This document shows, one piece after another, positions 15,415 to 42,805 of a DNA stretch of 64,000 nt. This DNA is from Macrostomum hystrix (taxonomy: Eukaryota; Animalia; Platyhelminthes). The notes under the pieces are model-generated. The model saw only the letters and a program-made list of their open reading frames with translations. It was not told where the DNA came from and did not search any database. Positions within the stretch are counted from its first letter, which is position 1. Each line of letters starts with the position of its first letter. Made by a program: the position numbers and the translations under genes. Where the stretch lies: the NCBI GenBank assembly GCA_950097015.1, contig CATNEN010000029.1, forward strand, positions 7,068,001 through 7,132,000, in the 5' to 3' direction.

Positions 15415-18400
15415 ATGGCGTTTGCGGACTCCGACACTTTGGAGTCCATCGAGTTGGACGAGCTGGTCGAACGTTATCAACGACGCCGGACTCCTTCTGG
15501 GGACACCCTGTCTGGCGCATCGGCGAAGACCTGGAATTCTGACAGCGACAAGCTTGAGCAGAACTTCAAGGACAGAGGCGTCTGGAGCAGCAAATTTGAC
15601 TTCTTTTTCGCCTGTCTCGGCTACGGAGTCGGCTTGGCCAATTTTCTGCGATTTCCCGGCCTCGTCTTCAAGAATGGAGGGGGTGGGTATCCGACTCTTC
15701 TCACCTAGATGGGATCTAGAGCTTCTCACCTGCATGGGATCTAGAGTTTCTAACCTGGATGGGATCTAGAGCTTCTCACCTGGATGGGATCTAGAGCTTC
15801 TCGCCTGCATGGGATCTAGAGCTTCTCACCTGGATGGGATCTAGAGCTTCTCGCCTGCATGGGATCTAGAGCTTCTCACCTGGATGGGATCTAGAGCTTC
15901 TCGCCTGCATGGGATCTAGAGTTTCTAACCTGGATGGGATCTAGAGCTTCTCACCTGCATGGGATCTAGAGTTTCTAACCTGGATGGGATCTAGAGCTTC
16001 TCACTTGCATGGGATCTAGAGTTTCTAACCTGGATGGGATCTAGAGCTTCTCACCTGGATGGGATCTAGAGCTTCTCACCTGGATGGGATCTAGAGCTTC
16101 TAACCTGGATGGGATCTAGAGCTTCTCACCTGGATGGGATCTAGAGCTTCTCACCTGCATGGGATCTAGAGTTTCTAACCTGGATGGGATCTAGAGCTTC
16201 TCACCTGGATGGGATCTAGAGCTTCTCGCCTGCATGGGATCTAGAGTTTCTAACCTGGATGGGATCTAGAGCTTCTCACCTGGATGGGATCTAGAGCTTC
16301 TCACCTGGATGGGATCTAGAGCTTCTCACCTGGATGGGATCTAGAGCTTCTCACCTAGATGGGATCTAGAGCTTCTCCTCTGGATGGGATCTAGAGCTTC
16401 TCCTCTGGATGGGATCTAGAAATAAAAACTGTTGTCACAAAACTCTTACCCAGATGGGATCTTAAAACTTAAACAGCTTGCGAAGACATCTTTAACAATT
16501 CTCGCCAAAAAACAAAAACAACAAACAGGCGTATTCTTCATACCATACATGCTGATGGTGTTCCTTTGCGTCATCCCCATCGTCTACCTGGAAATGATAA
16601 TTGGCCAATTCTCGTCCGCCTCCACTCTGCAATTCGGCCGAGTTATTCCGCTGTTTCAGGGTGAGTTTAAATAGCGGTCGATTCTGATTTCGAGTTGTCA
16701 ATAAGTGGAAAATTATTAGACATTGTGTAGACATTGAGTAGACATTGAGTAGACATTCAGTAGAGATTTAGTAGAGATTTAGAAATTATTTATTTTGTAG
16801 AAATTTGAGTAGACATTGAGTAGCCATTGATTAGACATTGGGTGGACATTGGGTAGACATGGGTAGACATTGGGTAGAGAGTGAGTAGACATTGAGTAGA
16901 CATTGGGTAGAGAGTGAGTGGACAATTGGTAGACATTTTGTAGACAGTGAGTAGACATTGATTAGACATTGGTTAGACATTAGGTAGATATTTGAGTAAA
17001 CATCGGGTAGATAGTGAGTAGACAATGTGTAGACATTGGGTAGACATTGAGTAGACATTGAGTGACATTGAGTTGACATTAAGTAGACAACGAGTAGACA
17101 TTGGATAGTGAGTGAGTAGACAACGAGTAGACAGTTGAGTAGACGTTGGATAGTGAGTGAGTAGACAATGAGTAGACGTTCATACGATATTGATTAAATT
17201 TTACACAAAAAAGGCAAACGTTTTTCAGGCATCGGTTGGGCCATGTTCATAGTGACATTCTTCAGCATTATCTACTATCAGATTGTACTGTCCTGGGTTG
17301 TCTATTATCTAGTCAGCTCGCTCACTTCCGATCTGCCATTCGGTCATTGCAACAACACCTGGAATACGCCCGGTTAGTGTAACAAACGATTTCTTTTAAT
17401 CCACGATTTATGATTACTCAAAGCGCAGTTGAACTCAACCTTCCAGCTTGCCGTACAGTCTCTCAGTGGAATTCCACAGTCAGTGTTAAGCACACCGTGC
17501 TTTTTAGCGATGGCAGTCCCAACTTCACCGACCTAATTGCGAAAACACCCAGCGAGGAGTATTTTAGGTGAGCGTGAACCTGATCCTCTTGTAAAAATCA
17601 CTGTTTATATTTTTCCTACCTAAATCTGAACTTATTTTGTGTTTTCCTAACCGAAATCGCTTCTAGTTCCTCGGCACGCCCCTTTAGTCGCCTGGGATTA
17701 TCCTTCGGGCTTACCCTAGATTACCTTTTGGTCTTTCCCTTCCTTAAATTACCCTTCGGTTTCTTTTTGGATTCCTCTTCGGGCTTTACGTGGAATTCCC
17801 TTCGGGTTTCCCCTTCGGGATTCCCCTTCGGGATTCCCCTTCGGGATTCCCCTTCGGAATTCCCCTTCGGGATTCCCCTTCGGGATTCCCCTTCGGGATT
17901 CCCCTTTGGGATTCCCTTCAGGGTTCTCCTTCGGGATTCCCCTTCGGGATTCCCCTTCGGGATTCCCCTTTGGGATTCCCTTCAGGGTTCTCCTTCGGGA
18001 TTCCGTTTGGGATTCACCTAGGATTCCTATTTGGGCTTCTTTCGGATTCCCTTTGGGGCATCATGTTGGATCCATTTAATCTAAATTTTGCTGACTTCCA
18101 AATAAATCGCAACGCGCACATTCAGAAACTACGTCCTGGCCGAGTCCGGTGACATCGGAATCCTGGGCTCCATCAACTGGCGCCTGGCGCTGAGCCTGCT
18201 CTTCGCCTGGGCCTGCGTCTTCATCGTCCTGTTCCAGGGCGTCACCTCGCCGAAGAAGGCAAGATTATCCTTGCCTGCAGAAAAATACTTTGTGACAGGG
18301 AGTCGATCACCCAATTACCGGATAAGACGCTTATTAGAAAATATTTGGGATAATCTTATCTTATGTTATGATTGTCATAACTAGGTTCTAGTTATTAAGA

Positions 18401-21400
18401 TCATCCAAGTTTGGGATCAACTGAGGTTTGGGATCAACTGAGGTTTGGGATCAACTGAGGTTTGGGATCAACTGAGGTTTGGGATCAACTGAGGTTTGGG
18501 ATCAACTGAGGTTTGGGATCAACTGAGGTTTGGGATCAACTGGGGTTTGGGATCAACTGAGGTTTGGGATCAACTGAGGTTTGAATATAATAATATTCTA
18601 CGCTCGTAACTCCCTTTGTATAAAGGAGATTATCCCTGATTCTAACTTAAAAACGAAAACATTGGCATTTTTTCAAGGTAATTTACTTTACGGTGGTGCT
18701 ACCTTGGGTCCTGATGATCGTCTTCCTAATTGCCACGGCCATGCTTACTGGCTCATCTATCGGCTTCAGGTACTTCCTCTCTCCCAACTGGGACAAGATT
18801 AGCCAGGCTTCGGTGAGTCATTTTTAACGAGGTACTCTGCAAAAGGGAGAGATTAGTAGACACAGGGACTACGGAGAGATTAGTAGACACAGGGATTACG
18901 GAGAGATTAGTAGACACAGGGATTACGGAGAGATTAGTAGACACAGAGATTACGGAGAGATTAGTAGACACAGGGATTACGGAGAGATTAGTAGACACAG
19001 GGATTACGGAGAGATTAGCAGACACAGGGATTACGGAGAGATTAGTAGACACAGGGATTACGGAGAGATTAGTAAACACAGGATTACGGAGAGATTAGTA
19101 GACACAGGGATTACGGAGAGATTAGTAAACACAGGATTACGGAGAGATTAGTAGACACAGGGATTACGGAGAGATTAGTAAACACAGGATTACGGAGAGA
19201 TTAGTAGACACAGGGATTACGGAGAGATTAGTAAACACAGGATTACGGAGAGATTAGTAGACACAGGGATTACGGAGAGATTAGTAGACACAGGGATTAC
19301 GGAGAGATTAGTAGACACAGGGATTATGGGGAGATTAGTAGACACAGGGATTACGGAGAGCTTAGTAGACACAGGGATTACGGAGAGATTAGTAGACACA
19401 TGGATTACGGAGAGATTAGTAGACACAGGGATTATGGGGAGATTAGTTGACACAGGGATTATGGGGAGATTAGTAAACACAGGGATTATGGGGAGATTAG
19501 TAGACACATGGATTATGGGGAGATTAGTTGACACAGGGATTACGGAGAGATTAGTAAACACAGGGATTACGGAGAGATTAGTAGACGCAAGATTACGGAG
19601 AGATAAGTAGACACAGGGATTACGGAGAGATTAGTAGACACAGGGATTACGGAGAGATTAGTAAACACAGGGATTACGGAGAGATTAGTAGACAAAGGGA
19701 TTACGGAGGGATTAGTAGACGCAAGATTACGGAGAGATTAGTAGACACAGGGATTACGGAGAGATTAGTAGACACAGGGATTACGGAGAGATTAGTAAAC
19801 ACAGGGATTACGGAGAGATTAGTAAACACAGGGATTACGGAGAGATTAGTAGACACAGGGATTACGGAGAGATTAGTAAACACAGGATTACGGAGAGATT
19901 AGTAAACACAGGGATTACGGAGAGATTAGTAAACACAGGATTACGGAGAGATTAGTAGACACAGGGATTATGGGGAGATTAGTAGACACAGGGATTACGG
20001 AGAGATTAGTAGACACAGGGATTATGGGGAGATTAGTAGACACAGGGATTACGGAGAGATTAGTAAACACAGGATTACGGAGAGATTAGTAGACACAGGG
20101 ATTATGGGGAGATTAGTAGACACAGGGATTACGGAGAGATTAGTAGACACAGGGATTACGGAGAGATTAGTAGACACAGGGATTACGGAGAGATTAGTAG
20201 ACACAGGGATTACGGAGAGATTAGTAGACGCAGGGATTACGGAGAGATTAGTAGACACAGGGATTATGGGGAGATTAGTAGACACAGGGATTACGGAGAG
20301 ATTAGTAGACACAGGGATTACGGAGAGATTAGTAGACACAGGGATTATGGGGAGATTAGTAGACGCAGGGATTATAAGAGTCCTCCCACTTCAAACTGTG
20401 ATTTCACAGACCTGGACAGACGCCTCCTCACAAGCGTTTTTCTCACTGGGACCCTGTTTTGGCGGCATCATGACCTTGTCCAGCTACAACAGGTTTAAAT
20501 ATAATATTCAACGGTAAGGTTTTTCTCATTCTTTCATCTTTGATGTCTATTTTATGCTATAAAGCTCAGATTTTAAAGAAAAAAGAATAAATCTGCGTTG
20601 TCTTAACAGCTCTACTTAACTAGTAGTAAGATGCAGGTTCGAATTTGGGTTTTCCGCTTTTAAAAATAAACAGGGACGCCATACTGCTAGCCCTGCTGGA
20701 CACTGTAACGAGCTTTCTGTCCGGCTTGGTGGTTTTCGGATCGCTTGGAGTCCTGTCCCACAAGACCGGAATCCCCATCACCGACCTGAGCATCTCGGGT
20801 GAGTCATTCGAAGCTTGACTAGTCATTTTAGATTAAGAATTTTTAGTATATTAGATAAAGCGCCAGCGAAAAATTATGACTTTTTGGGTCGGATGTACAT
20901 GCTATGTGTACACCATATGTACACCCTATGTACATAGAATATTCACTCGAGGTGCATGCTATGTGCACCCAATGTACATTCTAAGGGGGTGAGTGGCAGA
21001 GCGGCTAACGCGTTCGTTAACCTCACGCCTTCCTGAGCTCGATTCCTCGGCGAGGCCACATTCATTGGGGCTGAGAGAAGGCTTGGGAGCTTCTCGTGCA
21101 ATTTACGCCCTTGAGGGCCAACCTCCGCCAAGGCACAGTGAGATTATACACTGCCTGACGATGAGAAAGTCAGAGCAGATGTACACACCTGTGTGAGCGT
21201 GTACCTGCGTACAGTATCTGTGTGCGTGTGTGCTCAGGAGTCAGCGAAATGGGCAGAATTGCCTTCTCGCTGGCTGTAGGTCTAGTGCCACCAAATTATG
21301 AGCCATTGCCCGCAGCCCTCCTGCAACTATTATTATTATTATATGCACATTCTCAGTACATTCAATGTGCAACATGATTTCGAATGAGGCGCCAGCCAAT

Positions 21401-24400
21401 CAGAGCCGGTCTCGCTGCTCTCTCCCCCCGCCCTCAGGCAGCGGGCTCACCTTCATAGCCTACCCGGACCTGTTCGAGTCGCTCCCAGCTGCACCGGCGT
21501 GGAGCGCCGTGTTTTTCATGATGCTACTACTCCTGGGATTTTCTTCCCAACTGACAATGTCGGAGTCTCTCGTCACCTCCGTGCACGATCTGCTGCCGCG
21601 ACAGTACAAAAATAAAAAATTCAGAATCATCATCTTCTCCTGCCTGTGCATTGTGGGCATCTGTCTGGGCTTGTTGTTCACTTGTCAGGTAAATTGCACA
21701 AACCATCCGAGGAGTTCAATATCCCAGAACCTGTAGGACTATGTACTGAGGTCCATGTTCCGTATCTGTCTAGGTAGCGATTGAATTCAATTACAAATCT
21801 AGATACTAATAATTGCCAGCGTACTTATTTTTGTAGGGGGTTTTAGCCTAGTGGTTAGAGCATCGGACTCACGACTTGAAGGTCGGGGTTCGATTCCTGA
21901 CTCCACTGGAACAATTTGTGTCCTTTAGCAATATAACTAAATCTGCATTGCTTCAGTTCACCCAGCTGTTAAATAGGAGCCAGCATTAGCTGGGGTAATT
22001 GAGGGTGGGTGTGGCATCCCCCAGTCCATGGACTGATTTTATTTACTTATTCTTAACACAGAACTCACCTGAACAAATTGATTGCCCACTTCAGGCGGGT
22101 ATCTACTGGTTCGAATTGCTAAACAATTTCGCTGCGGATTGGAACCTTCTCATCATAGCCATATTCTTCTCATCGTCAATCATGTACTGCTACGGCTGGC
22201 GAAGGGTTGCAGTTGATGTGCAGTTCATGTCAGGGGTTCGACCCTCGCTGTATTGGTTCTCCAGCTGGTTCGCCACGCCGTTTCTGCTTTCGGTGAGTTG
22301 GGAAATTTCTGGAATTGCTAATCAATTGCTATCTAAAAACCTCAACATTCACAGATCCCAACACTCACAGATCCCAACATTCACAGATCCACACATTCAC
22401 AGATCCACACATTCACAGATCCCAACATACAAAGATCCACACATTCACAGATCCCAACATTCACCAATCCTCACATTCGCAGATCATAAAATTCACGGAT
22501 CCCAACAACAGCTCATAAAATTCACGAATCCTGACTTTCACAGATCCAAAAATTCACAGATCCCAACATTCACAGATCCCAACATTCACAGATCTCAACA
22601 CTCACAAATCCTATGGGGATGTGACTGTTTTTTCGTTAACTAGCATCGCTGGCCATCTCACAGCTCAGCAACTCAACCAGCTCGCATTGTAACAGCTGAA
22701 GGTCAAATGGATTCTAAAGGGCATCGATTGATAGGAGTTACGAAATCCTCATCTCTCACCGTTTCTCTGAGCTGTTCATTTGAGTTCACTTTTTTCCTGT
22801 CGGTTTGGGAGTTGAGTTAGTTCTCGTCCGTCTCACCTTTAGTCTCAGCTGAGAGATCCCGTGCTTTGAGCAATCGGAGCAGTCCGGGAAGGAAGACAGT
22901 CAGCTGACTCAAAACATGGGCGTGGCTGAGTTACTGTGTGGCTGAGTTTACTTGGCTAGTAAAGCTGCCAAGATGGCTTCAAAAGCCCGTTGCGGCTGCT
23001 TTCTGTTACACACAATAGCTGCTTGAAGTAAATATAAGATCAATTGCTCATCAATACTCACATAATACCACACTCCAATGACACTCCATGACACATTCCT
23101 TAAATACTAGAATCCTTAGAATCCTCAGCCCTAAATCTCTAGAAATCCCAGCTGGCAATCCCTAAAATCCCTAGCCCTCGATCCTTAAAATCAATAGCCC
23201 TCAATTTATAAAATACCCTGCCCGCGATTCTAAGAATCATCAGCCTTCAATTCCTAGAATCATCAGCCTTCAATTCCTAGAATCATCAGCCTTCAATTCC
23301 TAGAATCATCAGCCTTCAATTCCTAGAATCATCAGCCTTCAATTCCTAGAATCATCAGCCTTCAATTCCTAGAATCATCAGCCTTCAATTCCTAGAATCA
23401 TCAGCCTTCAATTCCTAGAATCATCAGCCTTCAATTCCTAGACTCATCAGCCTTCAATTCCTACAATCATCAGCCTTCAATTCCTAGAATCATCAGCCTT
23501 CAATTCCTAGAATCATCAGCCTTCAATTCCTAGAATCATCAGCCTTCAATTCCTAGAATCATCAGCCTTCAATTCCTAGAATCATCAGCCTTCAATTTCT
23601 AGAATCATCAGCCTTCAATTCCTAGAATCATCAGCCTTCAATTTCTAGAATCATCAGCCTTCAATTCCTAGACTCATCAGCCTTCAATTCCTAGAATCAT
23701 CAGCCTTCAATTCCTAGAATCATCAGCCTTCAATTCCTAGAATCATCAGCCTTCAATTCCTAGAATCATCAGCCTTGAATCCCTAGAATCATCAGCCTTG
23801 AATCCCTAGAATCACCAGCCTTGAATCCCTAGAATCATCAGCCTTGAATCTCTAGAATCATCAGCCTTGAATCCCTAGAATCATCAGCCTTGAATCCATA
23901 GAATCATCAGCCTTGAATCCCTAGAATCATCAGCCTTGAATCCCTAGAATCATCAGCCTTGAATCCCTAGAATCATCAGCCTTGAATCCCTAGAATCATC
24001 AGCCTTGAATCCCTAGAATCACCAGCCTTGAATCCCTAGAATCATCAGCCTTGAATCCCTAGAATCATCAGCCTTGAATCCCTAGAATCATCAGCCTTGA
24101 ATCCCTAGAATCACCAGCCTTGAATCCCTAGAATCATCAGCCTTGAATCCCTAGAATCATCAGCCTTCAATTCCTAGAATCATCAGCCTTCAATTCCTAG
24201 AATCATCAGCCTTCAATTCCTAGAATCATCAGCCTTCAATTCCTAGAATCATCAGCCTTCAATTCCTAGAATCATCAGCCTTCAATTCCTAGAATCATCA
24301 GCCTTCAATTCCTAGAATCATCAGCCTTCAATTCCTAGAATCATCAGCCTTCAATTCCTAGAATCATCAGCCTTCAATTCCTAGACTCATCAGCCTTCAA

Positions 24401-28489: not shown

Positions 28490-28865
28490 GTAACTATGAT
28501 GAGTCAGAAGCCCCTATGATTAGTCATTAGTTACTATGATGAGTCATTAGCTACCAGGATGAGTCATGAGCTACCAGGATGAGTCATTGGCTACTAGGAT
28601 GAGTCATTGGCTACTAGGATGAGTCATTAGCTACCAGGATAAGTCATTAGTTACCAGGATGAGTCATTAGCTACCAGGATGAGTCATTGGCTACTAGGAT
28701 GAGTCATTAGTTACCAGGATGAGTCATTAGCTACCAGGATAAGTCATTGGCTACCAGGATAAGTCATTAGTTACCAGGATGAGTCATTAGCTACCAGGAT
28801 GAGTCATTGGCTTCTAGGATGAGTCATTATAGTTACCAGGATGAGTCATTAGCTCCCAGGATGAG
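28490..28865. repeat. 20-bp minisatellite just upstream of the SLC6 domain-2 acceptor
   Basis: Unit gagtcattagctaccaggat. Confidence 0.95.
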
Positions 28866-28904
28866 AGACTCTTTGATCCCAATTTCCGATTTCCGATCGC
28901 TCAG

Positions 28905-31900: not shown

Positions 31901-34900
31901 GCTTTTGGCAATTAGAAATTTGGAGATAATTTTCTATTACGAAAATATATTATATTTGAGGGTAAGGATAATTCCCTTAGTACTGATAGGTGTGATGCTA
32001 ACTAATTACAAAGTCTACTGATAAGTATAAAGCGAACTAATTACATAATCTACTGATAGGTGTGAAGCTAACTAACTACGTAATCAACTAATAGGTGAGA
32101 AGCTAACTAATTACGTAATCAACTGATAGGTGTGAAGCTAACTAATTATATAGTCTACTGATAGGTGTGAAGCTAACTAATTATATAGTCTACTGATAGG
32201 TGTGAAGTGGCAGGTGTAAAGCTGTTGCAAATTAAGCAATAAATCAACAAGTGCCAATCTGCAGCCAGCTCATTGTTGCCTCCTGTCCGCAATGCAGATT
32301 CGGAGTTCTCGGCCTTCCGCCTGATGGAGGCGGAGACTCGCAGGGCATCAACTGGCAGCTATGGGCTTGCTGTCTGCTAATGTGGATCCTCATAGCTGCG
32401 TCACTGTTTCACGGCATTCGCAATTCTGGAAAGGTAATAATAATATTATTTACAATAATTGATTTCATTCGCCCCAATTGGGCCATATGTGCAGTCGACA
32501 GCACAACTGCAGCTATTACGCGGCGCATCTGAAGGCTGCGTACAGCTTTTCAGTCCATTGACTGGGGGACGCCACACCCACCTTCAATTACCCCAGATAA
32601 TGCTGGCACCTATTTAACAGCTGGGTGAACTGAAGCAATGCAGATTTAGTTATATTGCTAAAGGACACAAATTGTTCCAGTGGGGTCGGGAATCGAACCC
32701 CCGACTTTCAAGTCGTGAGTCCGACGCTCTAACCACAAGGCTACAACCTGCTGGCCCCTATAGTACCGCTACTGTCCTATCAAATGCATTAACGGGTAGA
32801 AGTACCACAACTATAAGAAGTTAAACACAGTCTAAAGTGTTGTTCTGTTTGTTAACAGTTTTTTTAAACTATAAATTAATTCCAGACTTTTGAACGGCCG
32901 ATAAACATGGCGTCAATGATGGTAATAAAACGCAAAATAACAATCATAAAAAACCTGATAACAAGTGCTTGCAGTTTCTTAAATAACCAATTAACAGTAG
33001 AAAAACCACACTAAGAGCTATGTATTCCCCGTTTGTCCTCCAACGCAGTCTATGTCTTAAAGCATTTCATTTTTTGCCCCGGGAAATAAACGGAAATAAA
33101 CGCCCGGGCGGATAAACGGAACGTTTACCATAGACAACTCACAGACGTCTGGGGGGAATAAAAAGAATGTAGCTCAAAGCAAGCCATAGCTTAGACAGCC
33201 TTTCCAGCCCAAGGACTTTTATATAATAGCATCTGGACTGGAAACGAGAAATCAATTTCACAATTATTTTACCATATGAGGCCAATGTTTAGCCGAGCAC
33301 AGCGGCTCTCCAGAGAAACATATCTACTTAAGCCGTCACACATCTCAAGGCGCCTACATTCCAGGCATGCACATTGAATTTGGTGGAAATCCTATGTTGT
33401 AGAGAGAAATGGAGTCTACTTTTTTCGGAGAAGCATTTCCAATTGATTTCAATGGCGTTTCAAATTGGCATTCCATCGGTCCCCAGCTGTCCACAATGAT
33501 GGAGTGGTTGCTTCAACCTACTGTTGCTTCTTGATAAAGTCAATTGCAGGCAAGTACAAGGACATGGTGTCCATGTTTCCTGTGGCAAAGCTGATAGCAC
33601 AGAAGCTCAGTCACTGGTTCCAGGATGTCATGGATTTGCTGCGTAGCCTGCAGTTCTCCGTCATTGCAATATCCGTTGATAATGCACCAGTTAACAGAAA
33701 GTTCGTCGCCGATTTTCTGTGCGATGGAGACTTGAAGGAGTCAATTACTGACAAGGTCACAGGGCAGCCTATCTTCATTGTGATCGATCCCGTGCACAAC
33801 CTCAAGAACATATACAACAACTTCCAGACACGGAAATCATTTCGCTGCCCAGCATTCCCACCAGTTTTGATAGAAGCCTGCGACGCTCACTTTTGTCACA
33901 TCGGTGAGCTGTTCAATGCTGAAGCCAACAAGCCGGTGAGACTTGCTCACAAGCTCAGCCCTGCTGTGCTGAACCCTAAAAATATCGAGATGTCGTCAGT
34001 GAAGCTGGCAGTGGCAGTATTCTGTGATTCAACTCGAGATGCACTCAAATACTACACTGCACATGAGAATAAGAACTGGAGTGGCACCGCAGGATTTGTC
34101 AGTTTAGGAACTAGAAAGGAACTAGCCAGTTAACATTACATCTCTGGATTTCCGACATTTGAATTTCCGATCTTGCATTTCCCAATTTGACAGATTCCAT
34201 AGAAAGCAGGGGAAAAACTGGCCTCATGAGGTAGGTAATGGGTATTTCTTCGCTTCCAGTCCAGATGCTATTATATAGAAGTCCTTGTCCAGCCTTTCAC
34301 GCCTAGTGTACACTTTTTACCATAGACGCTTCTTCTTCAAACAGGTCTGCTTTTTACCATAGACTATGAACAGAGTCCGAGAGAGAGAGTCATAGTTTAT
34401 ACACAGAGCGTAAAAGTGCAATCAAAGTTGGCGGGCAAACGGGAAATATTATTCATTTACCCCCGGGGAAAGACCCCCCGGGGGTATTTCACAATAGCTT
34501 CTAAACTGGATGACCGGTTTTCGTGACAGTCTACCATCTGAATCAACATTTTCCGCACCTTTACGATGAGCTAACTTTCAAAGCCGTCCGACGTCAGCAT
34601 CGTCAAGATATTCAGCGATTCTTGTCGAAGATCATGGCGACAAGGACAACTAACATTGCTCTGAATAAACTCTATTGGCGAATCCATATTGGTTTAAAAT
34701 AAAAAAATTAACAATATAATCAACAATAATAGCAGACATGATTATATGATACCATTTTGTGAGCAGAAAATTTATGCATATTTTTGTGGCTTTTGCCACC
34801 AGACACCGCGACGAGAATCTTTGAACATCTTGACGATGCCGATGTTTCCTGATTCTGGAAGTTGTCTCATCGGATAGAGCGGAAAGTCTTATCCCGTGTT

Positions 34901-37900
34901 CTGCATTTTTATGACGATTGGTTGAATATTTTGGGAGATACAGAAAAAAGAAAATGTGAGTACTATTATTTACAGTAATAATAGTTTTTGACTAGTATTT
35001 GAAAATACGCAAACATGGAAATATGGAAATACCTCCTTGATCTAAAATTAAATGGTGCATTATCCTAATTTCTATTTTCGATCGCACCTGTTCACTTATT
35101 TTTCTTCTGTCAACAAAAACCAACTCAACCCAGATATTCAGCATCTGCATTGTACTCGGCCTGCTGCTCATTATTGTGCTGTTCATACTGGCAGTCAGGG
35201 ACACCAGATCCCTCATTGGGATCCGTCTGTTCATCCGGCCGAACTGGGAGATCCTGACCGAGCCGCAGGCCTGGTACGAGGCGCTGGTTCAGGTGTTCTA
35301 CAATCTGGGCATCGGTTTTGGCTGCCTCATCAACCTGTCCAGTTATAACCGGTTCCACACTGGCTGCAAGAAGTGCGACTTGAGAATGGCTTTGTTTTCA
35401 TCCAAATTCTTCTAAATAAGAAAATTAATTATCAAAGTTCCACTCAGCACTAAATCTCCCGGAACTGTTTTATTTTCCAATTCCAATTTTCCCACTTCCA
35501 ACTTTCCCGATTCAAACTTTTCCCAATTTGAATTTACTCAAATCAAATTCTACACGAATAAATTTTTCCCAATTCAAGTTTTTTTCCAAGTAAAAACAAT
35601 CCCAGCTCAAGTTGATCCCAATTCAAGTTAAACCCAATTCAAGTTAATCCCAATTTAAGTTAATCCCAATTCATGTTAATCCCAATTCAACTTAGTCCCA
35701 ATTCAAGTTAATCCTAATTCAAGTTAATCCCGATTAAATTTAATCCCAATTCAAGTTCATCCCGATTGAATTTAATCCCAATTCAAGTTATTCCCAATTT
35801 TAGTAAATCCAAATTCAAATTTAATCCTGTTTCAAGTTAATCCCAATTAAATTTTTCCTAAATCAAATTAATCTTGCTTTAGATTCTTATCAGTTGAAAT
35901 TCTTCCGAATTCAATTTTTCCAGCCGAAAATCATACCCAATCAAAATATCGCCCCACTGAGAGTTCGCTGACCATTCACCCGCAGGACGGCAGTTTCCGT
36001 GGCCATCATAGACTTCCTCGTCAGCTTCTTCTGCGGCTTCATCCTGTTCTCATTCGCTGGAATCATTCTGTCCACGGACAGCTCTTTGGACATCTCCAGC
36101 CTCTTCGATGACAGTGAGCTTTGGTTATAATCTTACTAGTACACTGACTGAACGCAAGTCATTGTTATTGTTTTTGTTGTGCATGCATCACGTCCCAGTC
36201 ACGTGACCTTCTCGCCTGGCTGCTGTTTACCCGCCGCTCAATTTACGCTTTTCTGTCCCACTGGCCAATCGACGCGCGGATTGCAGATCTTGGATTTCGC
36301 TACAGCGTCTTCCTCATGTCCGCGACATCGGCCTCGGCGAATCCCGGCTTCCGCTGGGCCACCTGCATCTGGAGCCTCATCCTGGCCCTGCTCAGCTTCT
36401 CATCCGAGTGCCTGCACACCCTAGTGCTCACCGATGTGCTCAACATCTGGCTGAAAGGCAGGTGCGCCAACGCACCCGCATCCGTTCGCTCAATTCTGGA
36501 CCGGTGGTGGCCGGTGCTGAGCCTGTTCTGCAGCCTGCTGGCATTCGCCTCTCTGCCGCTGTTTAGCGCGGTAACTATGCGCACCCCGACCCACAATGTC
36601 CGCCCATTTCGCTAACATTAACTTACATTCTAACATTTTTAGCGATTAATGACTAACTAAATAACCAGCGATAAATATAGCATTAACAGTAAGGACTACC
36701 AAGCCATTTTTCCGCCCGTTTTTATACCAAGGGGGGGGGAATTTCCCCCCCCCTGACAATTTTTTTGCTGCATCAGAACGAAACAATGCAAGCACACGAA
36801 ACTCAAGAACACGGGCCAACTTTTTGTTGCGCATCTTCTGAAACAAGAAACAAGTCGCCAACTCTTCAGACCGTCGAGATATTCAATGTTTCTGGCCGAA
36901 GGTCAGATTTTTCCCATAAGAGCTAGTGTATTTCATACACCACTATACACGAATTTGCACTGCGCCTCAGTGCGACCTTCAACAAGTGGCACCAGCCGAC
37001 TATGGAGTCCCTAAAGCGAATTTCTCTACTTTCTCTAATAAAGCCTCGATATTGGCCTAAACTCAACTATTACTTGTTTAAGGTCCAGCTACTCCGTCTA
37101 GATAAAGGTCGGTGACCGCCGAAGTCGGAGATGATGCAAGCACATTCGGGTGACATGCTGATAAAGTTTGAAGGTCTGGAAATGCCGCACATTGCGCAGT
37201 GCAAATTCGTGTATAGTGGTGTATGAAATACACTAGCTCTTATGGGAAAAATCGGACCTTCAACCAGAGCCATTGAATATCTCGACGGTCTAAAGAGCTG
37301 GCGACTTATTTCTTGTTTCAGAAGATGCGCAACAAAAAGTTGGCCCGTGTTCTTGAGTTTCGTGTGCTTGCAGAGAAAGTAGAGAAAACCCCCCCCTTGG
37401 TAGTTCTACTGTTAACAACGGAAAAACCACGCTATTTTACGCCCTGTGGAACGACCACTGGGGTATTTCAAATACCCGCTGCCTAATTCACGACAGCTCC
37501 CAAACCGAATGACCGATTTTTGTCCACCATATGAATCTAAATTCTCCGTCCAACGTCAGCATCGTCAAGATATTCAGTGATTCTTATCGAAGATCCTGGT
37601 GACAAGGACAACAACATTTTGTGATTCTGGAAGTTGTTGAATATTAAATATTTTAGGCGATCCTGAAAAAAGCAGAATGTAGATATTTTAAATGCTTCGT
37701 GGTCATTTCTATACTCTCAATTGGTCAAGGAAGGCCTTTTACTAACAAACAATGTCCCCAGGCTCCCTGGCTGTCATGTTCTCATCCTACTCGGTGCTGC
37801 TAGCCAGGCAACCAGCCTGGGTGAGCTCGCTGCTCTACTTCACCTCGGCTGGACTCACTATGCTCAACCTGGCCGTCAGCGCCGACTGCCTCTCGACCAT

Positions 37901-40900
37901 CACCTTCACCACCGCCACCGTGACACGGCGTCTATGCGGCCAGCTGCCCGTTACTTTTCACGACCTTCTGCGCGTGGACGGAGCCACAGTTCGCGCCTGG
38001 TGGCTGCCCGCCTTTTGCCTGTCGATGGCTGTGCTGCAGCTGCCCCTGCTGGCTCCAGTGCGCACTGTGGCTTGACTTGCTTGAATATACTCACGAGCTG
38101 GCGATGCACTATTAGGCTAGAGATGGCTAGGGTGATTGTGACGAAATCCTAGGGAAATTTCGGGATAGAAAGGGTGTGAGTTGAATTCTATCAGCCTAGA
38201 ATCCTTTCTGACCAAGTATTCTTAGCTGAGCTTCATTAGACTATCTATCTGAGTGCACTAACATACTAATCGACTAATTAAATAACAATATGTTTTTGCG
38301 TAGATTTGAGCATGTCCAAGGCGTTTGTCTGTTTACAAATTCGGGAATCAGAAAGCCAGCTTGGCCAACCCCACAGACCGGCTTTCACCTTGTTGAACTA
38401 TTGGACGCCTACGGCATCGCCTGGTCTGTGGCGCTGCTTTGCCTCATGGAGTTGGCCACCATCAGCTGGGTTTTCGGCGTGCAGCAGTTTAGCGCCATCA
38501 TCAAGATCATGCTGCGCGGCAATTTGTCACTTTGGTGGAAGGCGTGCTGGACTGTCATTTCGCCTGCAGCCCTGCTGGTGAGTGTTCCAAGAGCAATGCT
38601 CTGATCACCTGGACAACAAAGCCTGATCTTACTTACTCATACTGGGCTCTTCACGCTGAAGTCCTTCCTGAATTCCTACTCCTGAAGTCCGTCTCCTAAT
38701 ATCCTTCTCCTGAAGTCCTTCTCCTGAAGTCCTTCTCCTGAAGTCCTTCTCCTGAATTCCTACTCCTGAAGTCCGTCTCCTAATATCCTTCTCCTGAAGT
38801 CCTTCTCCTGAAGTCCTTCTCCTGAAGTCCTTCTCCTGAATTCCTACTCCTGAAGTCCGTCTCCTAATATCCTTCTCCTGAAGTCCTTCTCCTGAAGTCC
38901 TTCTCCTGAAGTCCTTCTCCTGAATTCCTACTCCTGAAGTCCGTCTCCTAATATCCTTCTCCTGAAGTCCTTCTCCTGAAGTCCTTCTCCTGAAGTCCTT
39001 CTCCTGAAGTCCTTCTCCTGAATTCCTACTCCTGAAGTCCGTCTCCTAATATCCTTCTCCTGAAGTCCTTCTCCTGAAGTCCTTCTCCTGAAGTCCTTCT
39101 CCTGAATTCCTACTCCTGAAGTCCGTCTCCTAATATCCTTCTCCTGAAGTCCTTCTCCTGAAGTCCTTCTCCTGAAGTCCTTCTCCTGAATTCCTACTCC
39201 TGAAGTCCGTCTCCTAATATCCTTCTCCTGAAGTCCTTCTCCTGAAGTCCTTCTCCTGAAGTCCTTCTCCTGAATTCCTACTCCTGAAGTCCGTCTCCTA
39301 ATATCCTTCTCCTGAAGTCCATCCCGAAGTGCATAACTCGAAATCCTCATATTGAAGACCTCTCGCTGAAGTTCTATTTTTAAAGTCGTCATAAAGGCCT
39401 CTGACCGTTAAACAGCCAGCTTGAAGTCCGCCTCCTGAAATAGTAATTCAGAACTCCTGACCTTTGCAACCAATGCTCAGGTCAATCTAGTGATCAAATG
39501 GTTCAACAAGTCCACAGAAGTAGGCCTGCCGCTGCCAGAATGGACCAAAACAGCCAGCTACGTGCTGCAATTCCTGCCACTGCTGCCGCTGCCCATCTGC
39601 ATCGCCTACTACTTGGTCTTCGAAGCCAAAGGGTCACTTAAGCAGGTAACTACTACTAGTTCTACTACTACTTATACTCAATGACAGAGCGGTTAACTCG
39701 TTTTCCTCTCGCACCAAACTCCCTGAGCTCGATTCCGCGGCGAGGCGACATTTATCTGGGGCGCAGCCGCGGAGAGGTTTGGGGGCTTGTCGTGCAATTT
39801 ACGCCCTTGAGGGCCAACCTCCAAGGCACAGTGAGAGTGTACACTGCCTGACGATGAGAAAGTCAGAGCAGATGTACACACCTGTGTGAGCGTATGCCTG
39901 CGTACAGTATCTGTGTGCGTGTGAGTCAGGATTCAGCGGAATCGGCAGAATTGCCTCCTTGCTGGCTGCAGGTCTAGTGTCACCAAATTATGTGCCATTG
40001 CCCATTACCCACTACTACTACTGCTACTACTACTACTACTACTACTACTGCTACTACTACTACTACTGCTACTACTACTACTACTACTACCACCACTACT
40101 ACTACTACTACTACTACCACTACTACTACTACTACTACTAATAATAATAATAATAAAAATCCCTCAGCGTATGAAGTCCCTCGTCACCATCAACAAGAGC
40201 ATGTTCAATGGCGAAGAGTTCAATAAGCAAGTGTACGGCAATCACGCCACGGAGGCAACCGCCGAGGCAGCTGTTAGGAGGCCTCCGCGCAGTGTCAGCG
40301 CCATGGTGGACGGCGTCGACGCTATCACCGACGATCCGGACGGCAGTGGAGTGAGCGGCACCGGCAGCAGTATCAGCAGAGGCCTGGATGTCAGCAACGC
40401 GCCGAACGGCAAGGCCAATCATCGCCGGCTGACCAGCAAACGTCGGGTGAGCATCTACGGCAACGAGTTCGCCATCAGGATGGACTCAACGAACTCCAAG
40501 ATGCAGTTCTCTCGGCTATCGAGCGGGCAGCAGCAGCCGCTGTCGACAGTGCACAGTCTGTCATCGTCTTCGTCTTCTAGGATGCACAAGAGCAGCTCGG
40601 GCAGCGGCGGCAGCGGCGGTGGCAGAGGAAAGAAGCTGGACCTGCGCGGCATGATGGCAGCGCAGAAGAACTCGGTGCTGCCACTCGTCAACTTGGCCGC
40701 CACCATGGCCATCAACGGCGGCGGCAGCGGCCGGAGGAATTTCTGCCGACAATGCGGAGGTGAGATTTCAGAATGCAATTTTCCAGGAATTGTGCTGCAG
40801 ATTGTAATCCATTCGTTTGAGCTTCAGACTTCCGACCGAAGAGAGACATTTTATGCAATTGAGCAAGACACTTCATTCCCCAAGTGCTTCAATTTACCCG

Positions 40901-42361
40901 GCTATAAAATGGGTATCAGCATCAGCTGGGTTAGATATTAGTGGGGTGGGTGTGGCGGCCTCCTTAGTCCACGGACTGAACAGCTGTAGGCAGCTTTTAG
41001 AAGCGACGCGCAATAGCTGCGGCTGTGCCACAGGCTGAATATCTGGCCCAACTATTCTAGGTGTAATTTCTATATCTAACCATTCTATGGAAATGGTTGC
41101 ACTGCTGTGGGATTAGAGCACTGCTGTTTGATCCAGATGAGTAGGGATTTGAGCACTGCTGTTTGATCCAGATGAGTAGGGATTTGAGCACTTCTGTTTG
41201 ATCCAGATGAGTAGGGATTTGAGCACTGCTGTTTGATCCAGATGAGTAGGGATTTGAGCACTGCTGTTTGATCCAGATGAGTAGGGATTTGAGCACTGCT
41301 GTTTGATCCAGATGAGTAGGGATTAGAACACTGCTGTTTGATCCAGATGAGTAGGGATTTGAGCACTGCTGTTTGATCCAGATGAGTAGGGATTTGAGCA
41401 CTGCTGTTTGATCCAGATGAGTAGGGATTTGAGCACTGCTGTTTGATCCAGATGAGTAGGGATTTGAGCACTGCTGTTTGATCCAGATGAGTAGGGATTA
41501 GAGCACTGCTGTTTGATCCAGATGAGTAGGGATTAGAACACTGCTGTTTGATCCAGATGAGTAGGGATTTGAGCACTGCTGTTTGATCCAGATGAGTAGG
41601 GATTTGAGCACTGCTGTTTGATCCAGATGAGTAGGGATTTGAGCACTGCTGTTTGATCCAGATGAGTAGGGATTTGAGCACTGCTGTTTGATCCAGATGA
41701 GTAGGGATTAGAGCACTGCTGTTTGATCCAGATGAGTAGGGATTTGAGCACTGCTGTTTGATCCAGATGAGTAGGGATTTGAGCACTGCTGTTTGATCCA
41801 GATGAGTAGGGATTTGAGCACTGCTGTTTGATCCAGATGAGTAGGGATTTGAGCACTGCTGTTTGATCCAGATGAGTAGGGATTTGAGCACTGCTGTTTG
41901 ATCCAGATGAGTAGGGATTTGAGCACTGCTGTTTGATCCAGATGAGTAGGGATTAGAACACTGCTGTTTGATCCAGATGAGTAGGGATTTGAGCACTGCT
42001 GTTTGATCCAGATGAGTAGGGATTAGAACACTGCTGTTTGATCCAGATGAGTAGGGATTTGAGCACTGCTGTTTGATCCAGATGAGTAGGGATTTGAGCA
42101 CTGCTGTTTGATCCAGATGAGTAGGGATTAGAGTACTGCTGTTTGATCCAGATGAGTAGGGATTTGAGCACTGCTGTTTGATCCAGATGAGTAGGGATTA
42201 GAGCACTGCTGTTTGATCCAGATGAGTAGGGATTTGAGCACTGCTGTCCATCGTGACTTTTTATTTCAGTCTCTGGCAGTCGAGAAACTATACTTAACAG
42301 TGCCAGTGCCACTGCTGAAGCAGATACAGAAGGTGTGATTTCAAAGGCGCCACTTCAGCAG

Positions 42362-42429
<68 letters not shown>

Positions 42430-42565
42430 GGAACAGCAGCAGCAGCAGCAGCAGCAAAAACAACAACAACAGCAGCAGCAGCAGCAGCAGCAGCAAAAAC
42501 AACAACAACAGCAGCAGCAGCAGCAGCCGGAACAGCAGCAGCAGCAGCAGCAGCAAAAACAACAA

Positions 42566-42597
<32 letters not shown>

Positions 42598-42610
42598 AAA
42601 ACAACAACAA

Positions 42611-42666
<56 letters not shown>

Positions 42667-42805
42667 ACAGCAACAGCAGCAGCAGCAGCAGCATCAGCAG
42701 CAGCAGCAGCAGCAGCAGAAGGAACAGCAGCAGCAGCAGCAGCAAGACAGTGCTTGCCAAACTGACCCATCAGTAACAGAGCACGTTAGACGTAACTCAA
42801 TGTGA
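28905..42805 (+). CDS. SLC6: SLC6/NSS transporter domain 2 with long C-tail. Exons 28905-29049, 29838-30113, 31666-31810, 32298-32433, 35134-35372, 35986-36113, [36287-36570 or 37762-38057], 38377-38577, 39481-39645, 40168-40759, 42270-42805
   Basis: [72 protein letters not shown]. All phases join in frame; no in-frame ATG upstream of TM1 (stop at 28842). The last exon join is inferred from phase only. Confidence 0.85.
29197..29760. mobile_element. Non-autonomous DNA element with TTAA flanks (partial copy of the 36687 family)
   Basis: ttaa|cagtagtactaccaag ... ggcagttctattg|ttaa; body matches 36687-37411. Confidence 0.75.
30360..30635 (-). mobile_element. SINE family B
   Basis: Reverse complement of the 21837 copy plus additional 3' segment. 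Confidence 0.85.
31255..31554 (-). mobile_element. SINE family A
   Basis: Minus-strand head ggggttgagtagcagagcggtctaacgcg...gagttcgattcc. Confidence 0.8.
31980..32210. repeat. ~36-bp intronic minisatellite
   Basis: Unit tctactgataggtgtgaagctaactaattatatag with variants. Confidence 0.85.
32478..32748 (-). mobile_element. SINE family B
   Basis: Highly similar reverse complement of 21837-22040. Confidence 0.85.
33210..34287 (+). mobile_element. Internally deleted P-superfamily DNA transposon
   Basis: TIRs caaggacttttatataatagcatctggactggaa / ttccagtccagatgctattatatagaagtccttg; exact 7-bp TSD tccagcc at 33203-33209 and 34288-34294. Confidence 0.9.
33465..34133 (+). pseudogene. P-element/THAP9-like transposase fragment (222 aa, no THAP domain, truncated)
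   Basis: Motifs [54 protein letters not shown]. Confidence 0.85.
34484..34960 (+). mobile_element. Unclassified fold-back dispersed repeat family C
   Basis: Internal inverted repeat catcgtcaagatattcagcgattcttgtcg / cgacgagaatctttgaacatcttgacgatg; homologs at 14720 and 37460. Confidence 0.65.
35600..35870. repeat. 16-bp intronic minisatellite
   Basis: Unit ttcaagttaatcccaa. Confidence 0.85.
36287..36570 (+). CDS. SLC6 domain 2 TM8-TM9 exon, version X1
   Basis: ttgcag acceptor (phase 1), gtaact donor (phase 0); [32 protein letters not shown]. Confidence 0.75.
36687..37411. mobile_element. Non-autonomous long-TIR DNA element with TTAA target duplication
   Basis: ttaa|cagtaaggactaccaag ... 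cttggtagttctactg|ttaa; 179-bp inverted arms 36787-36965 and 37194-37372. Confidence 0.85.
37460..37690 (+). mobile_element. Repeat family C, deleted copy
   Basis: Matches 34484-34660 and 34850-34960. Confidence 0.6.
37762..38057 (+). CDS. SLC6 domain 2 TM8-TM9 exon, version X2
   Basis: tccccag acceptor (phase 1), gtgcgc donor (phase 0); [42 protein letters not shown]. Confidence 0.7.
38660..39320. repeat. 14-bp intronic minisatellite with 84/98-bp higher-order blocks
   Basis: Unit tgaagtccttctcc with periodic variants gaattcctactcc and gtctcctaatatcc. Confidence 0.95.
39681..40157 (+). mobile_element. SINE family A with expanded (TAC)n(TAA)n tail
   Basis: Body matches the 20985 copy; ~150-bp triplet tail ends 10 nt before the exon starting at 40168. 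Confidence 0.85.
40895..41052 (+). mobile_element. 5'-truncated SINE family B
   Basis: Matches the 3' half of the 30360 and 32478 copies. Confidence 0.7.
41100..42245. repeat. 35-bp intronic minisatellite
   Basis: Unit gagcactgctgtttgatccagatgagtagggattt. Confidence 0.95.
42356..42745 (+). repeat. (CAG/CAA)n tract, ~130 codons, polyglutamine in the inferred terminal exon
   Basis: In-frame interruptions (K, PE, E, H); 99-bp internal duplication (ccg at 42428 and 42527). Confidence 0.95.

What the first reader, a model, noticed from the sequence alone, without database searches (positions are those of the whole stretch)
15415..42805. Probable single gene encoding a tandem double-SLC6 (two NSS domains, ~24 TM, ~1640 aa)
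Seen: the last domain-1 exon (27197-27490) is open, has no ATG and ends GAG|GTGAGA in phase 0. The first domain-2 exon starts after a phase-0 acceptor (atttccgatcgctcag|ACC at 28905) and has no in-frame ATG between the stop at 28842 and TM1. Splicing 27490 to 28905 gives ...EEQANAE|[23 protein letters not shown] with no frameshift: 691 + 948 codons. The 1.4-kb gap looks like the other introns here, with a 21-bp repeat right after the donor and a 20-bp array right before the acceptor. Known: SLC6 proteins normally have one 12-TM domain with both termini cytoplasmic, so a covalent tandem is topologically possible. Inference: a fused heterodimeric NSS transporter, an architecture I do not know as characterised.
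Basis: partly seen in the sequence, partly recalled or inferred. Interest (0 to 1): 0.85.

Follow-up and report, generated by a model that had tools for sequence, protein, structure and literature searches.

The report
Tandem SLC6 transporters, possibly fused
Two complete sodium-coupled (SLC6) transporter units lie 1.4 kb apart in a Macrostomum flatworm genome and can be spliced in frame into one 24-helix protein, as happens in molluscs; without RNA, two separate genes cannot be excluded.

Summary
Unit D1 (12 exons, 691 codons) covers the whole SLC6 profile. Unit D2 is a complete but more divergent copy. D1's tail exon has no stop before a strong phase-0 donor at 27490. D2's first exon has no ATG and starts at a phase-0 acceptor at 28905.

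New support for a fusion: double-SLC6 proteins exist. They are predicted in all mollusc classes and two annelids. Intronless 6-8 kb transcript contigs carry uninterrupted 1555- and 2029-residue double ORFs. The scallop gene joins its halves by the same exon design. I found no paper describing this architecture.

New doubt: the genome carries spliced-leader genes identical to the Macrostomum lignano leader, which ends in ATG. This scan has already noted leader-donated start codons many times in this genome, on other DNA. Seven of 20 other SLC6 first exons here also lack an ATG. So D2 could be a separate trans-spliced gene.

No RNA run was listed, so the junction is untested. Trees do not resolve whether the flatworm pair is orthologous to the mollusc fusion.

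Odds: about 0.55 that a fused mRNA is made, about 0.38 that these are two genes.

The parts
15415..15682 (+). D1 exon 1: start ATG, N-terminal tail and TM1 (ends NGG|G, phase 1)
   Evidence: Pfam PF00209 positions 1-39; splice model
16529..17372 (+). D1 exons 2-3 (16529-16660, 17229-17372): TM2 and TM3
   Evidence: PF00209 positions 33-82 and 79-129; donors AGG|GTGAGT and CCG|GTTAGT
17447..18258 (+). D1 exons 4-5 (17447-17567, 18126-18258): extracellular loop 2 and TM4; exon 5 ends at a GC donor, AAG|GCAAGA
   Evidence: PF00209 positions 158-204; sequence read; model
18678..20798 (+). D1 exons 6-8 (18678-18812, 20410-20513, 20674-20798): TM5, TM6 and TM7. Exon sizes are 135, 104 and 125 nt. 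From my own knowledge, untested here, these are typical SLC6 exon sizes.
   Evidence: PF00209 positions 204-327; model
21438..25806 (+). D1 exons 9-11 (21438-21688, 22095-22292, 25639-25806): TM8 to TM12
   Evidence: PF00209 positions 298-523; model
27197..27490 (+). D1 exon 12: 98-codon cytoplasmic tail, phase 0 at both ends, no stop, no Met. It would be the linker if the units are fused.
   Evidence: The intron before it sits where D2 and the scallop gene have theirs, after TM12. Donor score 9.5. Single copy in the genome.
27491..28904 (+). 1414-bp gap: either an intron or an intergenic spacer. It holds the 21-bp repeat (27495-27591), the read-through stop (27611-27613), AATAAA (27659), a possible short D1 terminal exon from acceptor 27785 (8 codons then a stop), a possible tiny ATG exon (27804-27854), and the 20-bp array (28459-28865).
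28905..29049 (+). D2 exon 1: 19 residues followed by TM1. It has no ATG and starts at a phase-0 acceptor. A second in-frame acceptor lies at 28860.
   Evidence: PF00209 positions 3-38
29838..32433 (+). D2 exons 2-4 (29838-30113, 31666-31810, 32298-32433): TM2 and TM3 fused in one exon, loop 2, TM4
   Evidence: PF00209 positions 37-132 and 172-210; model
35134..36113 (+). D2 exons 5-6 (35134-35372, 35986-36113): TM5 and TM6 fused in one exon, then a divergent TM7
   Evidence: PF00209 positions 178-286; the whole-domain HMM match covers it
36287..36570 (+). D2 exon 7a: one of two alternative TM8-TM9 exons
   Evidence: In frame only if 7b is skipped. HMM score 466 with 7a, 461 with 7b, and the frame breaks if both are used.
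37762..38066 (+). D2 exon 7b: the other alternative TM8-TM9 exon
38377..39645 (+). D2 exons 8-9 (38377-38577, 39481-39645): TM10 to TM12, ending ...GSLKQ| in phase 0
   Evidence: PF00209 positions 407-476; model
40168..40941 (+). D2 tail exon. The frame stops at 40939-40941, but a strong donor at 40759 (the same 9-mer as at 27490) may splice it onward.
42270..42805 (+). Probable last D2 exon, including a (CAG)n poly-Gln run, with a stop at 42803-42805. The intron before it is filled by a 35-bp array.
   Evidence: The acceptor is weak (score 3.3), so this exon is uncertain.

Best explanation
The locus makes a spliced mRNA in which D1's tail exon (27197-27490) is cis-spliced to D2's TM1 exon (28905, or the in-frame acceptor at 28860). 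The product is one polypeptide of about 1640 residues with 24 transmembrane helices, that is, two SLC6 protomers joined covalently by a cytoplasmic linker of about 120 residues.

The N-terminal half, D1, keeps most sodium-site and substrate-site hallmarks. It is inferred to be an active Na+-coupled amino-acid-type transporter.

The C-terminal half, D2, is more divergent in TM1, TM6, TM7 and TM8, and it carries two mutually exclusive TM8-TM9 exons. It is inferred to be a modified or regulatory partner whose properties alternative splicing can switch.

Shown here: both units are complete, the joint keeps the frame, the donor is strong, and natural double-SLC6 mRNAs with the same junction design exist in other spiralians.

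Inferred: that this junction is used in Macrostomum, that both halves fold side by side, and any division of labour between them. Separate D1-only or leader-started D2-only transcripts may be made as well.
For: 1. D1 covers PF00209 positions 1-523 over 11 exons, and D2 covers the same profile.
2. The tail exon is open with no stop. It ends at GAG|GTGAGA in phase 0 with a donor score of 9.5. Only about 3 unexplained GT sites in 64 kb score as high, and GT[G/A]AG is the M. lignano cis-donor motif.
3. The D2 TM1 exon has no ATG and starts in phase 0. The joined frame is open.
4. There is precedent. The top hits of a D2 exon search include 1573-, 1093- and 1699-residue mollusc proteins with two SLC6 stretches. 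A search with the scallop double protein lists such proteins from scallops, oysters, mussels, abalone, Littorina, octopus, a chiton and the annelid Owenia; a second search, with the Owenia linker, adds the annelid Dimorphilus.
5. Intronless contigs L001 (6.1 kb) and L002-L004 (from three runs) carry uninterrupted 1555- and 2029-residue double ORFs, whereas the scallop gene is spread over 98 kb. The fusion is therefore real at the mRNA level.
6. In the scallop gene, a stop-less D1 tail exon with phase 0 at both ends (residues 675-736) is spliced across 17.4 kb to the D2 TM1 exon. This is the same design as here.
7. As quoted in PMC8629364, an acceptor is trans-spliced only when no donor lies upstream in cis. 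A strong unpaired donor at 27490 would therefore favour cis-splicing on any read-through pre-mRNA.
8. D1 and D2 are old, divergent copies. D2's TM1 exon is closer to a paralogue on contig C11 than to D1. They are nonetheless the only SLC6 pair in the genome lying this close together.
Against: - There is no RNA evidence. No RNA run was listed for 25600-30148, so read laying could not be used.
- The genome has spliced-leader RNA genes whose leader ends ...TTGCATG|GTAAG. A phase-0 ATG-less acceptor is what a leader-started gene needs.
- Seven of 20 other SLC6 TM1 exons here lack an ATG, and N-termini of 10-20 residues are common. D2 alone would look normal.
- The 27490 donor could instead feed a short D1 terminal exon, for example from acceptor 27785, which gives 8 codons and a stop.
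- A tiny ATG exon at 27804-27854 with a phase-0 donor (score 7.4) could start D2.
- The mollusc linker motifs are largely absent. The canonical and degenerate halves are in the opposite order to molluscs. Trees do not show orthology.
Confidence: 0.55

Rival explanations
1. These are two separate genes in an operon-like pair. D1 ends in the gap, either by read-through to the stop at 27611-27613 or by splicing 27490 to a short terminal exon such as 27785-27811. D2 is a stand-alone 12-helix transporter. Its mRNA starts by spliced-leader trans-splicing at 28905, and the leader's terminal AUG serves as the start codon, giving Met-Thr-Lys-Ser-His-Asp... Alternatively D2 starts from a tiny ATG exon at 27804-27854.
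For: - Spliced-leader RNA genes identical to the 35-nt M. lignano leader, ending ATG|GTAAG, occur 19 times in the genome (leader sequence from PMC8629364).
- A flatworm leader's AUG can serve as the initiator (Cheng 2006, as cited in PMC9851317).
- In M. lignano, 30% of genes are trans-spliced and 15% lie in operons. Repeats inflate the spacers there, and a repeat-adjusted 1-kb threshold defines an operon. Here the spacer from the stop to 28905 is about 1.3 kb, of which about 0.4 kb is tandem repeat.
- Seven of 20 paralogous TM1 exons lack an ATG, and N-termini are short.
- Candidate terminal and initial mini-exons exist in the gap.
- Earlier notes of this scan report many ATG-less phase-0 starts in this genome.
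Against: - Plain read-through requires that one of the best donor matches in 64 kb falls, by chance, in phase 0 just before a repeat-encoded Cys/His-rich 40-residue tail.
- Under the mini-exon version, the donor's phase agreeing with D2's acceptor is a 1-in-3 coincidence.
- The acceptor GCTCAG| lacks the [T/C]TNCAG motif, which was found at 44% of M. lignano trans-splice sites. This is only weak evidence.
- AATAAA at 27659 is not informative.
Confidence: 0.38
2. D2 is a decaying or non-translated duplicate, and only D1 is a working gene. The in-frame joint is an accident.
For: D2's TM7 and TM8-9 exons fall below Pfam detection on their own. D2 has the longest branch in every tree. Several sodium-site positions are changed.
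Against: - All ten D2 exons are open and have usable splice sites.
- The whole-domain HMM match spans profile positions 26-593 with about 460 bits.
- TM1, TM2-3, TM6 and TM10 motifs are kept.
- Two alternative TM8-9 exons both keep the frame. This would not be expected of a dead gene.
Confidence: 0.04

Closest known systems
Spiralian double-SLC6 proteins, all 'uncharacterized'. Examples: Ylistrum balloti XP_060064335.1 (1573 aa), Physella acuta XP_059161224.1 (1699 aa), Octopus sinensis LOC115211848 (2131 aa), and the Owenia fusiformis and Dimorphilus gyrociliatus models.
   Same: Two PF00209 units in one chain. The linker between TM12 and TM1' is about 100-125 residues. A stop-less D1 tail exon with phase 0 at both ends is spliced to the D2 TM1 exon. 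One half is canonical and one degenerate. The C-terminal tail is long and has several exons.
   Different: In molluscs the first half is the degenerate one; here it is the second. The mollusc linker motif (WGPG...P[DE]YVIC...TANLY) and the C-tail motif (AILNHAYSNPQC) are not found here. Only a VPDYI-like piece is present, and that also occurs in single-unit tails. Orthology is unresolved. The mollusc fusion has mRNA support; this one has none.
Engineered hSERT-rGAT1 concatemer (Seidel et al. 2005, as described in PMC8247324)
   Same: Two SLC6 transporters joined head to tail in one chain. It was used to show functional interaction between linked protomers. This shows that such a tandem can be made and studied.
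   Different: It is man-made, with two canonical halves. It is not a natural gene.
Flatworm genes that take their start codon from the spliced leader, and Macrostomum operons (Cheng 2006 via PMC9851317; PMC8629364)
   Same: An ATG-less first coding exon beginning at a phase-0 acceptor, a short spacer to an upstream same-strand gene, and a leader ending in AUG present in this genome.
   Different: Here the upstream gene offers a strong, unpaired, in-frame donor with no stop before it. An ordinary operon does not need this.
Single-unit SLC6 amino-acid transporters of the GlyT / ATB0+ / PROT type
   Same: Each half matches PF00209 end to end, with shared intron positions. Both halves fall among these sequences in the trees.
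   Different: Those proteins have 12 helices and one unit per gene.

Membership tests
SLC6 / NSS (Pfam PF00209 SNF) | End-to-end match of unit D1 to the family profile | tested here: met
   Eleven D1 exons tile profile positions 1-523. Local HMM score 606 bits.
SLC6 / NSS (Pfam PF00209 SNF) | End-to-end match of unit D2 to the family profile | tested here: met
   Exon matches cover positions 3-38, 37-132, 172-286 and 407-476. The TM7 and TM8-9 exons give no Pfam hit alone, but the spliced domain matches local HMM positions 26-593 at about 460 bits.
SLC6 / NSS (Pfam PF00209 SNF) | Conserved sodium-site and gating residues in TM1, TM6, TM7 and TM8 | tested here: inconclusive
   Read by eye, against LeuT/SERT positions recalled from memory. 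D1 keeps the TM1 Asn (GLAN), has FFSLG in TM6, Asp where TM7 usually has Asn, and GFSS in TM8. D2 has GLGN in TM1, FYNLG in TM6, Asp in TM7, and an unrecognisable TM8 motif. No structure or assay was available.
Spiralian double-SLC6 fusion | Both units in one open reading frame on a mature mRNA | not testable with these tools
   No RNA run was listed.
Spiralian double-SLC6 fusion | A stop-less D1 tail exon, phase 0 at both ends, followed by an ATG-less phase-0 D2 TM1 exon | tested here: met
   Window exons 27197-27490 and 28905-29049. Scallop exons for residues 675-736 and 737-805.
Spiralian double-SLC6 fusion | Linker motif WGPG...P[DE]YVIC.PD...LA..TANLY and C-tail motif AILNHAYSNPQC | tested here: not met
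   The linker and tail alignment by eye shows only W...LAN and VPDYI pieces. tblastn of the mollusc proteins gives no hit on 27197-27490.
Spiralian double-SLC6 fusion | D1 groups with mollusc/annelid D1, and D2 with their D2, in a tree | tested here: inconclusive
   The quick tree puts flatworm D1 beside mollusc D1 (SH-aLRT 82). A tree with flatworm D1 and D2 held together is 8.5 log-likelihood units better (AU p = 0.69). The careful tree leaves both unresolved.
Leader-started (SL-AUG) flatworm gene | The genome encodes a spliced leader ending in AUG | tested here: met
   19 exact copies of ...GACTCAATTTATTGCATG|GTAAG. The full 35-nt leader equals that of M. lignano.
Leader-started (SL-AUG) flatworm gene | First coding exon without an ATG, starting at a phase-0 acceptor | tested here: met
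   D2 exon 1 at 28905.
Leader-started (SL-AUG) flatworm gene | Leader-joined reads at the acceptor | not testable with these tools
   No runs were available.
Leader-started (SL-AUG) flatworm gene | The [T/C]TNCAG motif enriched at trans-splice acceptors | tested here: not met
   The acceptor reads GCTCAG|. The motif is present at only 44% of M. lignano sites, so this test is weak.

The most novel reading that the evidence does not exclude
Macrostomum makes a natural 24-helix covalent SLC6 heterodimer. It has a canonical first half and a degenerate second half, and mutually exclusive exons can swap the second half's TM8-TM9. It would belong to, or converge on, a wholly uncharacterised class of double SLC6 transporters that is conserved across molluscs and annelids. 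That would give a natural model for how linked SLC6 protomers influence each other.
Probability: 0.5. Interest if true: 0.75.

Novelty: new variant of a known kind. Interest (0 to 1): 0.6.

Why it matters
Whether SLC6 transporters act as independent monomers or as cooperating oligomers is still debated (review PMC8247324). It has been probed with artificial concatemers.

A natural, conserved gene that hard-wires two different SLC6 units together, one of them degenerate, would show that evolution has used protomer coupling. It would also offer defined heterodimers for structural and transport studies.

Double-SLC6 proteins are common in molluscs, occur in annelids and have mRNA support, yet I found no paper on them.

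For genome annotation, the locus is a useful test case. In a trans-splicing animal whose leader ends in AUG, 'no ATG plus an in-frame upstream exon' does not by itself prove a fusion.

Tried and rejected
- **RNA evidence.** The look-up of sequencing runs on 25600-30148 (kind rna) listed none. None was listed, which is not the same as none exists.
- **Tail exon in the protein database.** No hit. That tool sees only proteins of 54-171 residues for this query, so longer relatives were invisible.
- **Paralogue of the tail exon in the genome.** None was found, so no within-genome comparison of the junction was possible.
- **Orthology by trees.** Three builds and one AU test gave an unstable placement. 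A second AU test (flatworm D2 with mollusc D2) did not finish and was dropped.
- **Shared intron loss as a marker.** TM5 and TM6 are fused in one exon in both flatworm D2 and scallop D2. I rejected this as evidence because most SLC6 paralogues in this genome show the same fusion.
- **'Repeats mark introns'.** Rejected, because arrays occur throughout the window.
- **AATAAA at 27659 as a poly(A) signal.** Not informative: 22 copies in 28 kb.
- **Macrostomum lignano A0A1I8GB13 (896 aa) as a flatworm double.** Rejected. Its second unit is a near-identical partial copy of the first, probably merged tandem duplicates.
- **Doubles and multiples in a frog, in Solemya and in Gigantopelta.** These have near-identical halves that are sisters in the tree. 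They are probably merged tandem paralogues, not the same thing. The fish and Mesorhabditis models carry four or more partial units and look like merges too; they were not placed in any tree.
- **Literature.** Three searches for a natural tandem SLC6 found nothing relevant.
- **Joined model.** Exons were joined only inside local scripts, read from window.fa by coordinates, for HMM scoring, alignment and trees.


Full report
**What is there.** The window is contig C29:7068001-7132000 of a 220-Mb, 42-contig genome. The genome carries spliced-leader RNA genes identical to the 35-nt leader of Macrostomum lignano, so it is a Macrostomum flatworm.

On the + strand between 15.4 and 42.8 kb lie two complete SLC6 (PF00209) units. 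D1 has 12 exons and 691 codons, starting at ATG 15415. Its exons tile profile positions 1-523. Its exon sizes of 135, 104 and 125 nt are, from my own knowledge, typical of SLC6 genes; this was not tested here. One of its introns is GC-AG. D2 has 10-11 exons. Exon by exon it matches the profile except in TM7 and TM8-9. As a spliced domain it matches a local SLC6 HMM over positions 26-593, at about 460 bits against 606 for D1.

**Checking the observation.**
- The tail exon 27197-27490 is open, has no Met, and is in phase 0 at both ends.
- The D2 TM1 exon starts at 28905 in phase 0 and has no ATG upstream of TM1.
- The joint keeps the frame.
- Read-through ends at 27611-27613.
- A 21-bp repeat and a 20-bp repeat flank the gap.

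I scored splice sites with weight matrices built from the locus's other 20 introns. The donor at 27490 scores 9.5. Only 10 of 3288 GT sites in the window reach that, and six of those are training donors. The acceptor at 28905 is average at 6.1. A second in-frame acceptor at 28860 scores 7.5 but sits in a repeat unit.

Tandem-repeat arrays occur all over the window, and AATAAA occurs 22 times in 28 kb.

**The architecture exists elsewhere.** An exhaustive search with one D2 exon put proteins of 1573, 1093, 1699 and 1227 residues, each with two matched stretches, at the top. They are 'uncharacterized' proteins of a scallop, a mussel and two snails. A search with the scallop protein then listed full-length doubles from scallops, oysters, pearl oyster, mussels, clams, abalone, Littorina, octopus, a chiton and the annelid Owenia. 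A further search with the Owenia linker added the annelid Dimorphilus.

Four contigs assembled from sequencing runs carry uninterrupted ORFs of 1555 and 2029 residues: L001 at 6.1 kb, and L002-L004 from three different runs. The scallop gene has 27 exons spread over 98 kb. These contigs must therefore come from spliced mRNA, and the fusion is real in those animals.

In the scallop gene, the D1 tail is a 62-codon exon with phase 0 at both ends and no stop. It is spliced across 17.4 kb to the ATG-less D2 TM1 exon. That is the same junction design as in the window. Three literature searches found no description of a natural tandem SLC6. The nearest studied object is the engineered hSERT-rGAT1 concatemer.

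**Is the flatworm pair the same gene?** This is not shown.
- Mollusc D1 is the degenerate half and D2 the canonical one. Here the order is reversed.
- The conserved mollusc linker and C-tail motifs are absent. Only W...LAN and VPDYI pieces remain, and these also occur in tails of single-unit relatives.
- tblastn finds nothing in the tail exon.
- The trees are unstable. A quick tree puts flatworm D1 beside mollusc D1 (SH-aLRT 82). A tree with the two flatworm halves held together is 8.5 log-likelihood units better. The careful tree leaves both unresolved.
- The shared fusion of the TM5 and TM6 exons in both D2s is not a useful marker, because most SLC6 paralogues in this genome have it.

Flatworm spliced leaders end in AUG, and that AUG can start translation (Cheng 2006 via PMC9851317). 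This genome has 19 exact copies of the leader's 3' half followed by GTAAG, and the full 35-nt leader is identical to that of M. lignano. In M. lignano 30% of genes are trans-spliced and 15% lie in operons whose spacers are inflated by repeats.

Earlier notes of this scan report many ATG-less phase-0 first exons in this same genome, on other DNA. I tested how unusual D2 is. Of 20 other SLC6 TM1 exons in the genome, 7 have no in-frame ATG. Those that do have one often leave only 10-20 residues before TM1. A stand-alone D2 starting Met-Thr-Lys-Ser-His... would therefore look ordinary here.

The gap also offers two mini-exons. One is a possible short D1 terminal exon from acceptor 27785, giving 8 codons and a stop. 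The other is a possible tiny ATG exon at 27804-27854 with a phase-0 donor scoring 7.4.

**Weighing.** Plain read-through of D1 is unlikely. It requires one of the best donor matches in 64 kb to sit in phase 0, by chance, just before a repeat-encoded tail.

If the donor is real, it either joins D2 or joins a mini-exon. Joining D2 makes the phase agreement necessary. Joining a mini-exon makes the phase agreement a 1-in-3 coincidence, and D2 must then rely on the leader or on a tiny exon.

As quoted, an acceptor is trans-spliced when no donor lies upstream in cis. A read-through pre-mRNA would therefore tend to be cis-spliced here. D1 and D2 are old, divergent copies that have nevertheless stayed 1.4 kb apart, the only such SLC6 pair in the genome. 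With the precedent from other spiralians, I put about 0.55 on a fused mRNA being made, about 0.38 on two genes that are never fused, and a few per cent on D2 being dead. The last is made unlikely by its intact exons and by two frame-keeping alternative TM8-9 exons.

**How it would work (inferred).** SLC6 proteins have both ends in the cytoplasm. This is established knowledge of the family and was not tested here. A linker of about 120 residues from TM12 to TM1' is therefore topologically sound, and it is similar in length to the mollusc linkers.

D1 keeps the TM1 Asn, FFSLG in TM6 and a Ser-rich TM8 motif. D2 has changes at several sodium-site positions. The most likely picture is one active half coupled to a modified half. 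No structure, assay or complex prediction was possible on a spliced model.

**Limits.** The single run search found nothing, so the reads tool was unusable. The protein searches were capped and length-limited. It was built only in local scripts, from window coordinates.

Noticed in passing
window 36287-36570 and 37762-38066: D2 has two alternative TM8-TM9 exons. Either one keeps the frame (local HMM 466 and 461 bits), and using both breaks it with 12 stops. They are therefore mutually exclusive. This agrees with the scan's note s1-382004.
   Followed up: yes
window 33447-34130 (+), inside the D2 intron 32434-35133: A 228-codon open frame matches P-element/THAP9-type transposase domains (TNP-like RNase H N-terminal domain and GTP-binding insertion domain). 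It is a transposon remnant inside the intron.
   Followed up: partly
G000:C39:12667901-12753120, and C15, C17, C42: The canonical spliced-leader genes sit in roughly 11.6-kb tandem units on C15, C17 and C42. In addition, about 70 copies of a variant (GACTCTCTTTTTTGCATG|GTAAG) form a 927-bp tandem array on C39. This may be a second leader type or a related small RNA.
   Followed up: no
20 loci L010-L029 (TM1 exons of other SLC6 genes in G000): Seven of 20 SLC6 TM1 exons have no in-frame ATG in their open frame. Several others start only 10-20 residues before TM1. The motif DEN.ERGNW recurs just before TM1.
   Followed up: partly
window 18258/18678: A GC-AG intron (AAG|GCAAGA ... ttttttcaag|) in D1. 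Using the next GT donor, at 18291, would insert 11 residues into a conserved stretch.
   Followed up: partly
window 27495-27720: The 21-bp repeat after the 27490 donor is followed by inverted copies of its core (TGTACACAGCCTCC). The stretch looks like a foldback element.
   Followed up: no
window 40759 and 27490: The same 9-mer, GAG|GTGAGA, marks both the D1 tail donor and a strong donor inside the D2 tail exon. The D2 tail intron is almost filled by a 35-bp x 32 array. The last exon encodes a long (CAG)n poly-Gln run.
   Followed up: partly
whole window: There are about 30 different tandem-repeat arrays with periods of 11-60 bp (36 overlapping TRF rows). Nearly every intron longer than 400 bp holds its own array. 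This explains why gene models are hard to see here.
   Followed up: partly
related proteins P0185, P0181, P0186, P0242, P0253, P0005, P0184: Database 'double' or 'multiple' SLC6 models from a frog, Solemya and Gigantopelta have near-identical units that are sisters in the tree (P0185, P0184, P0005). The M. lignano model (P0253) ends in a near-identical partial second unit. The fish and Mesorhabditis models (P0181, P0186, P0242) carry four or more partial units. All are probably tandem paralogues merged by gene predictors, unlike the divergent-halves family of molluscs and annelids.
   Followed up: partly
mollusc D1 domains (for example P0001 residues 107-690): In the mollusc family, the first half has lost the GLGN motif of TM1. 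It reads GLHG, GIRN, NTSS and so on in different species. It still forms a well-supported clade, so this is a conserved but degenerate half.
   Followed up: partly
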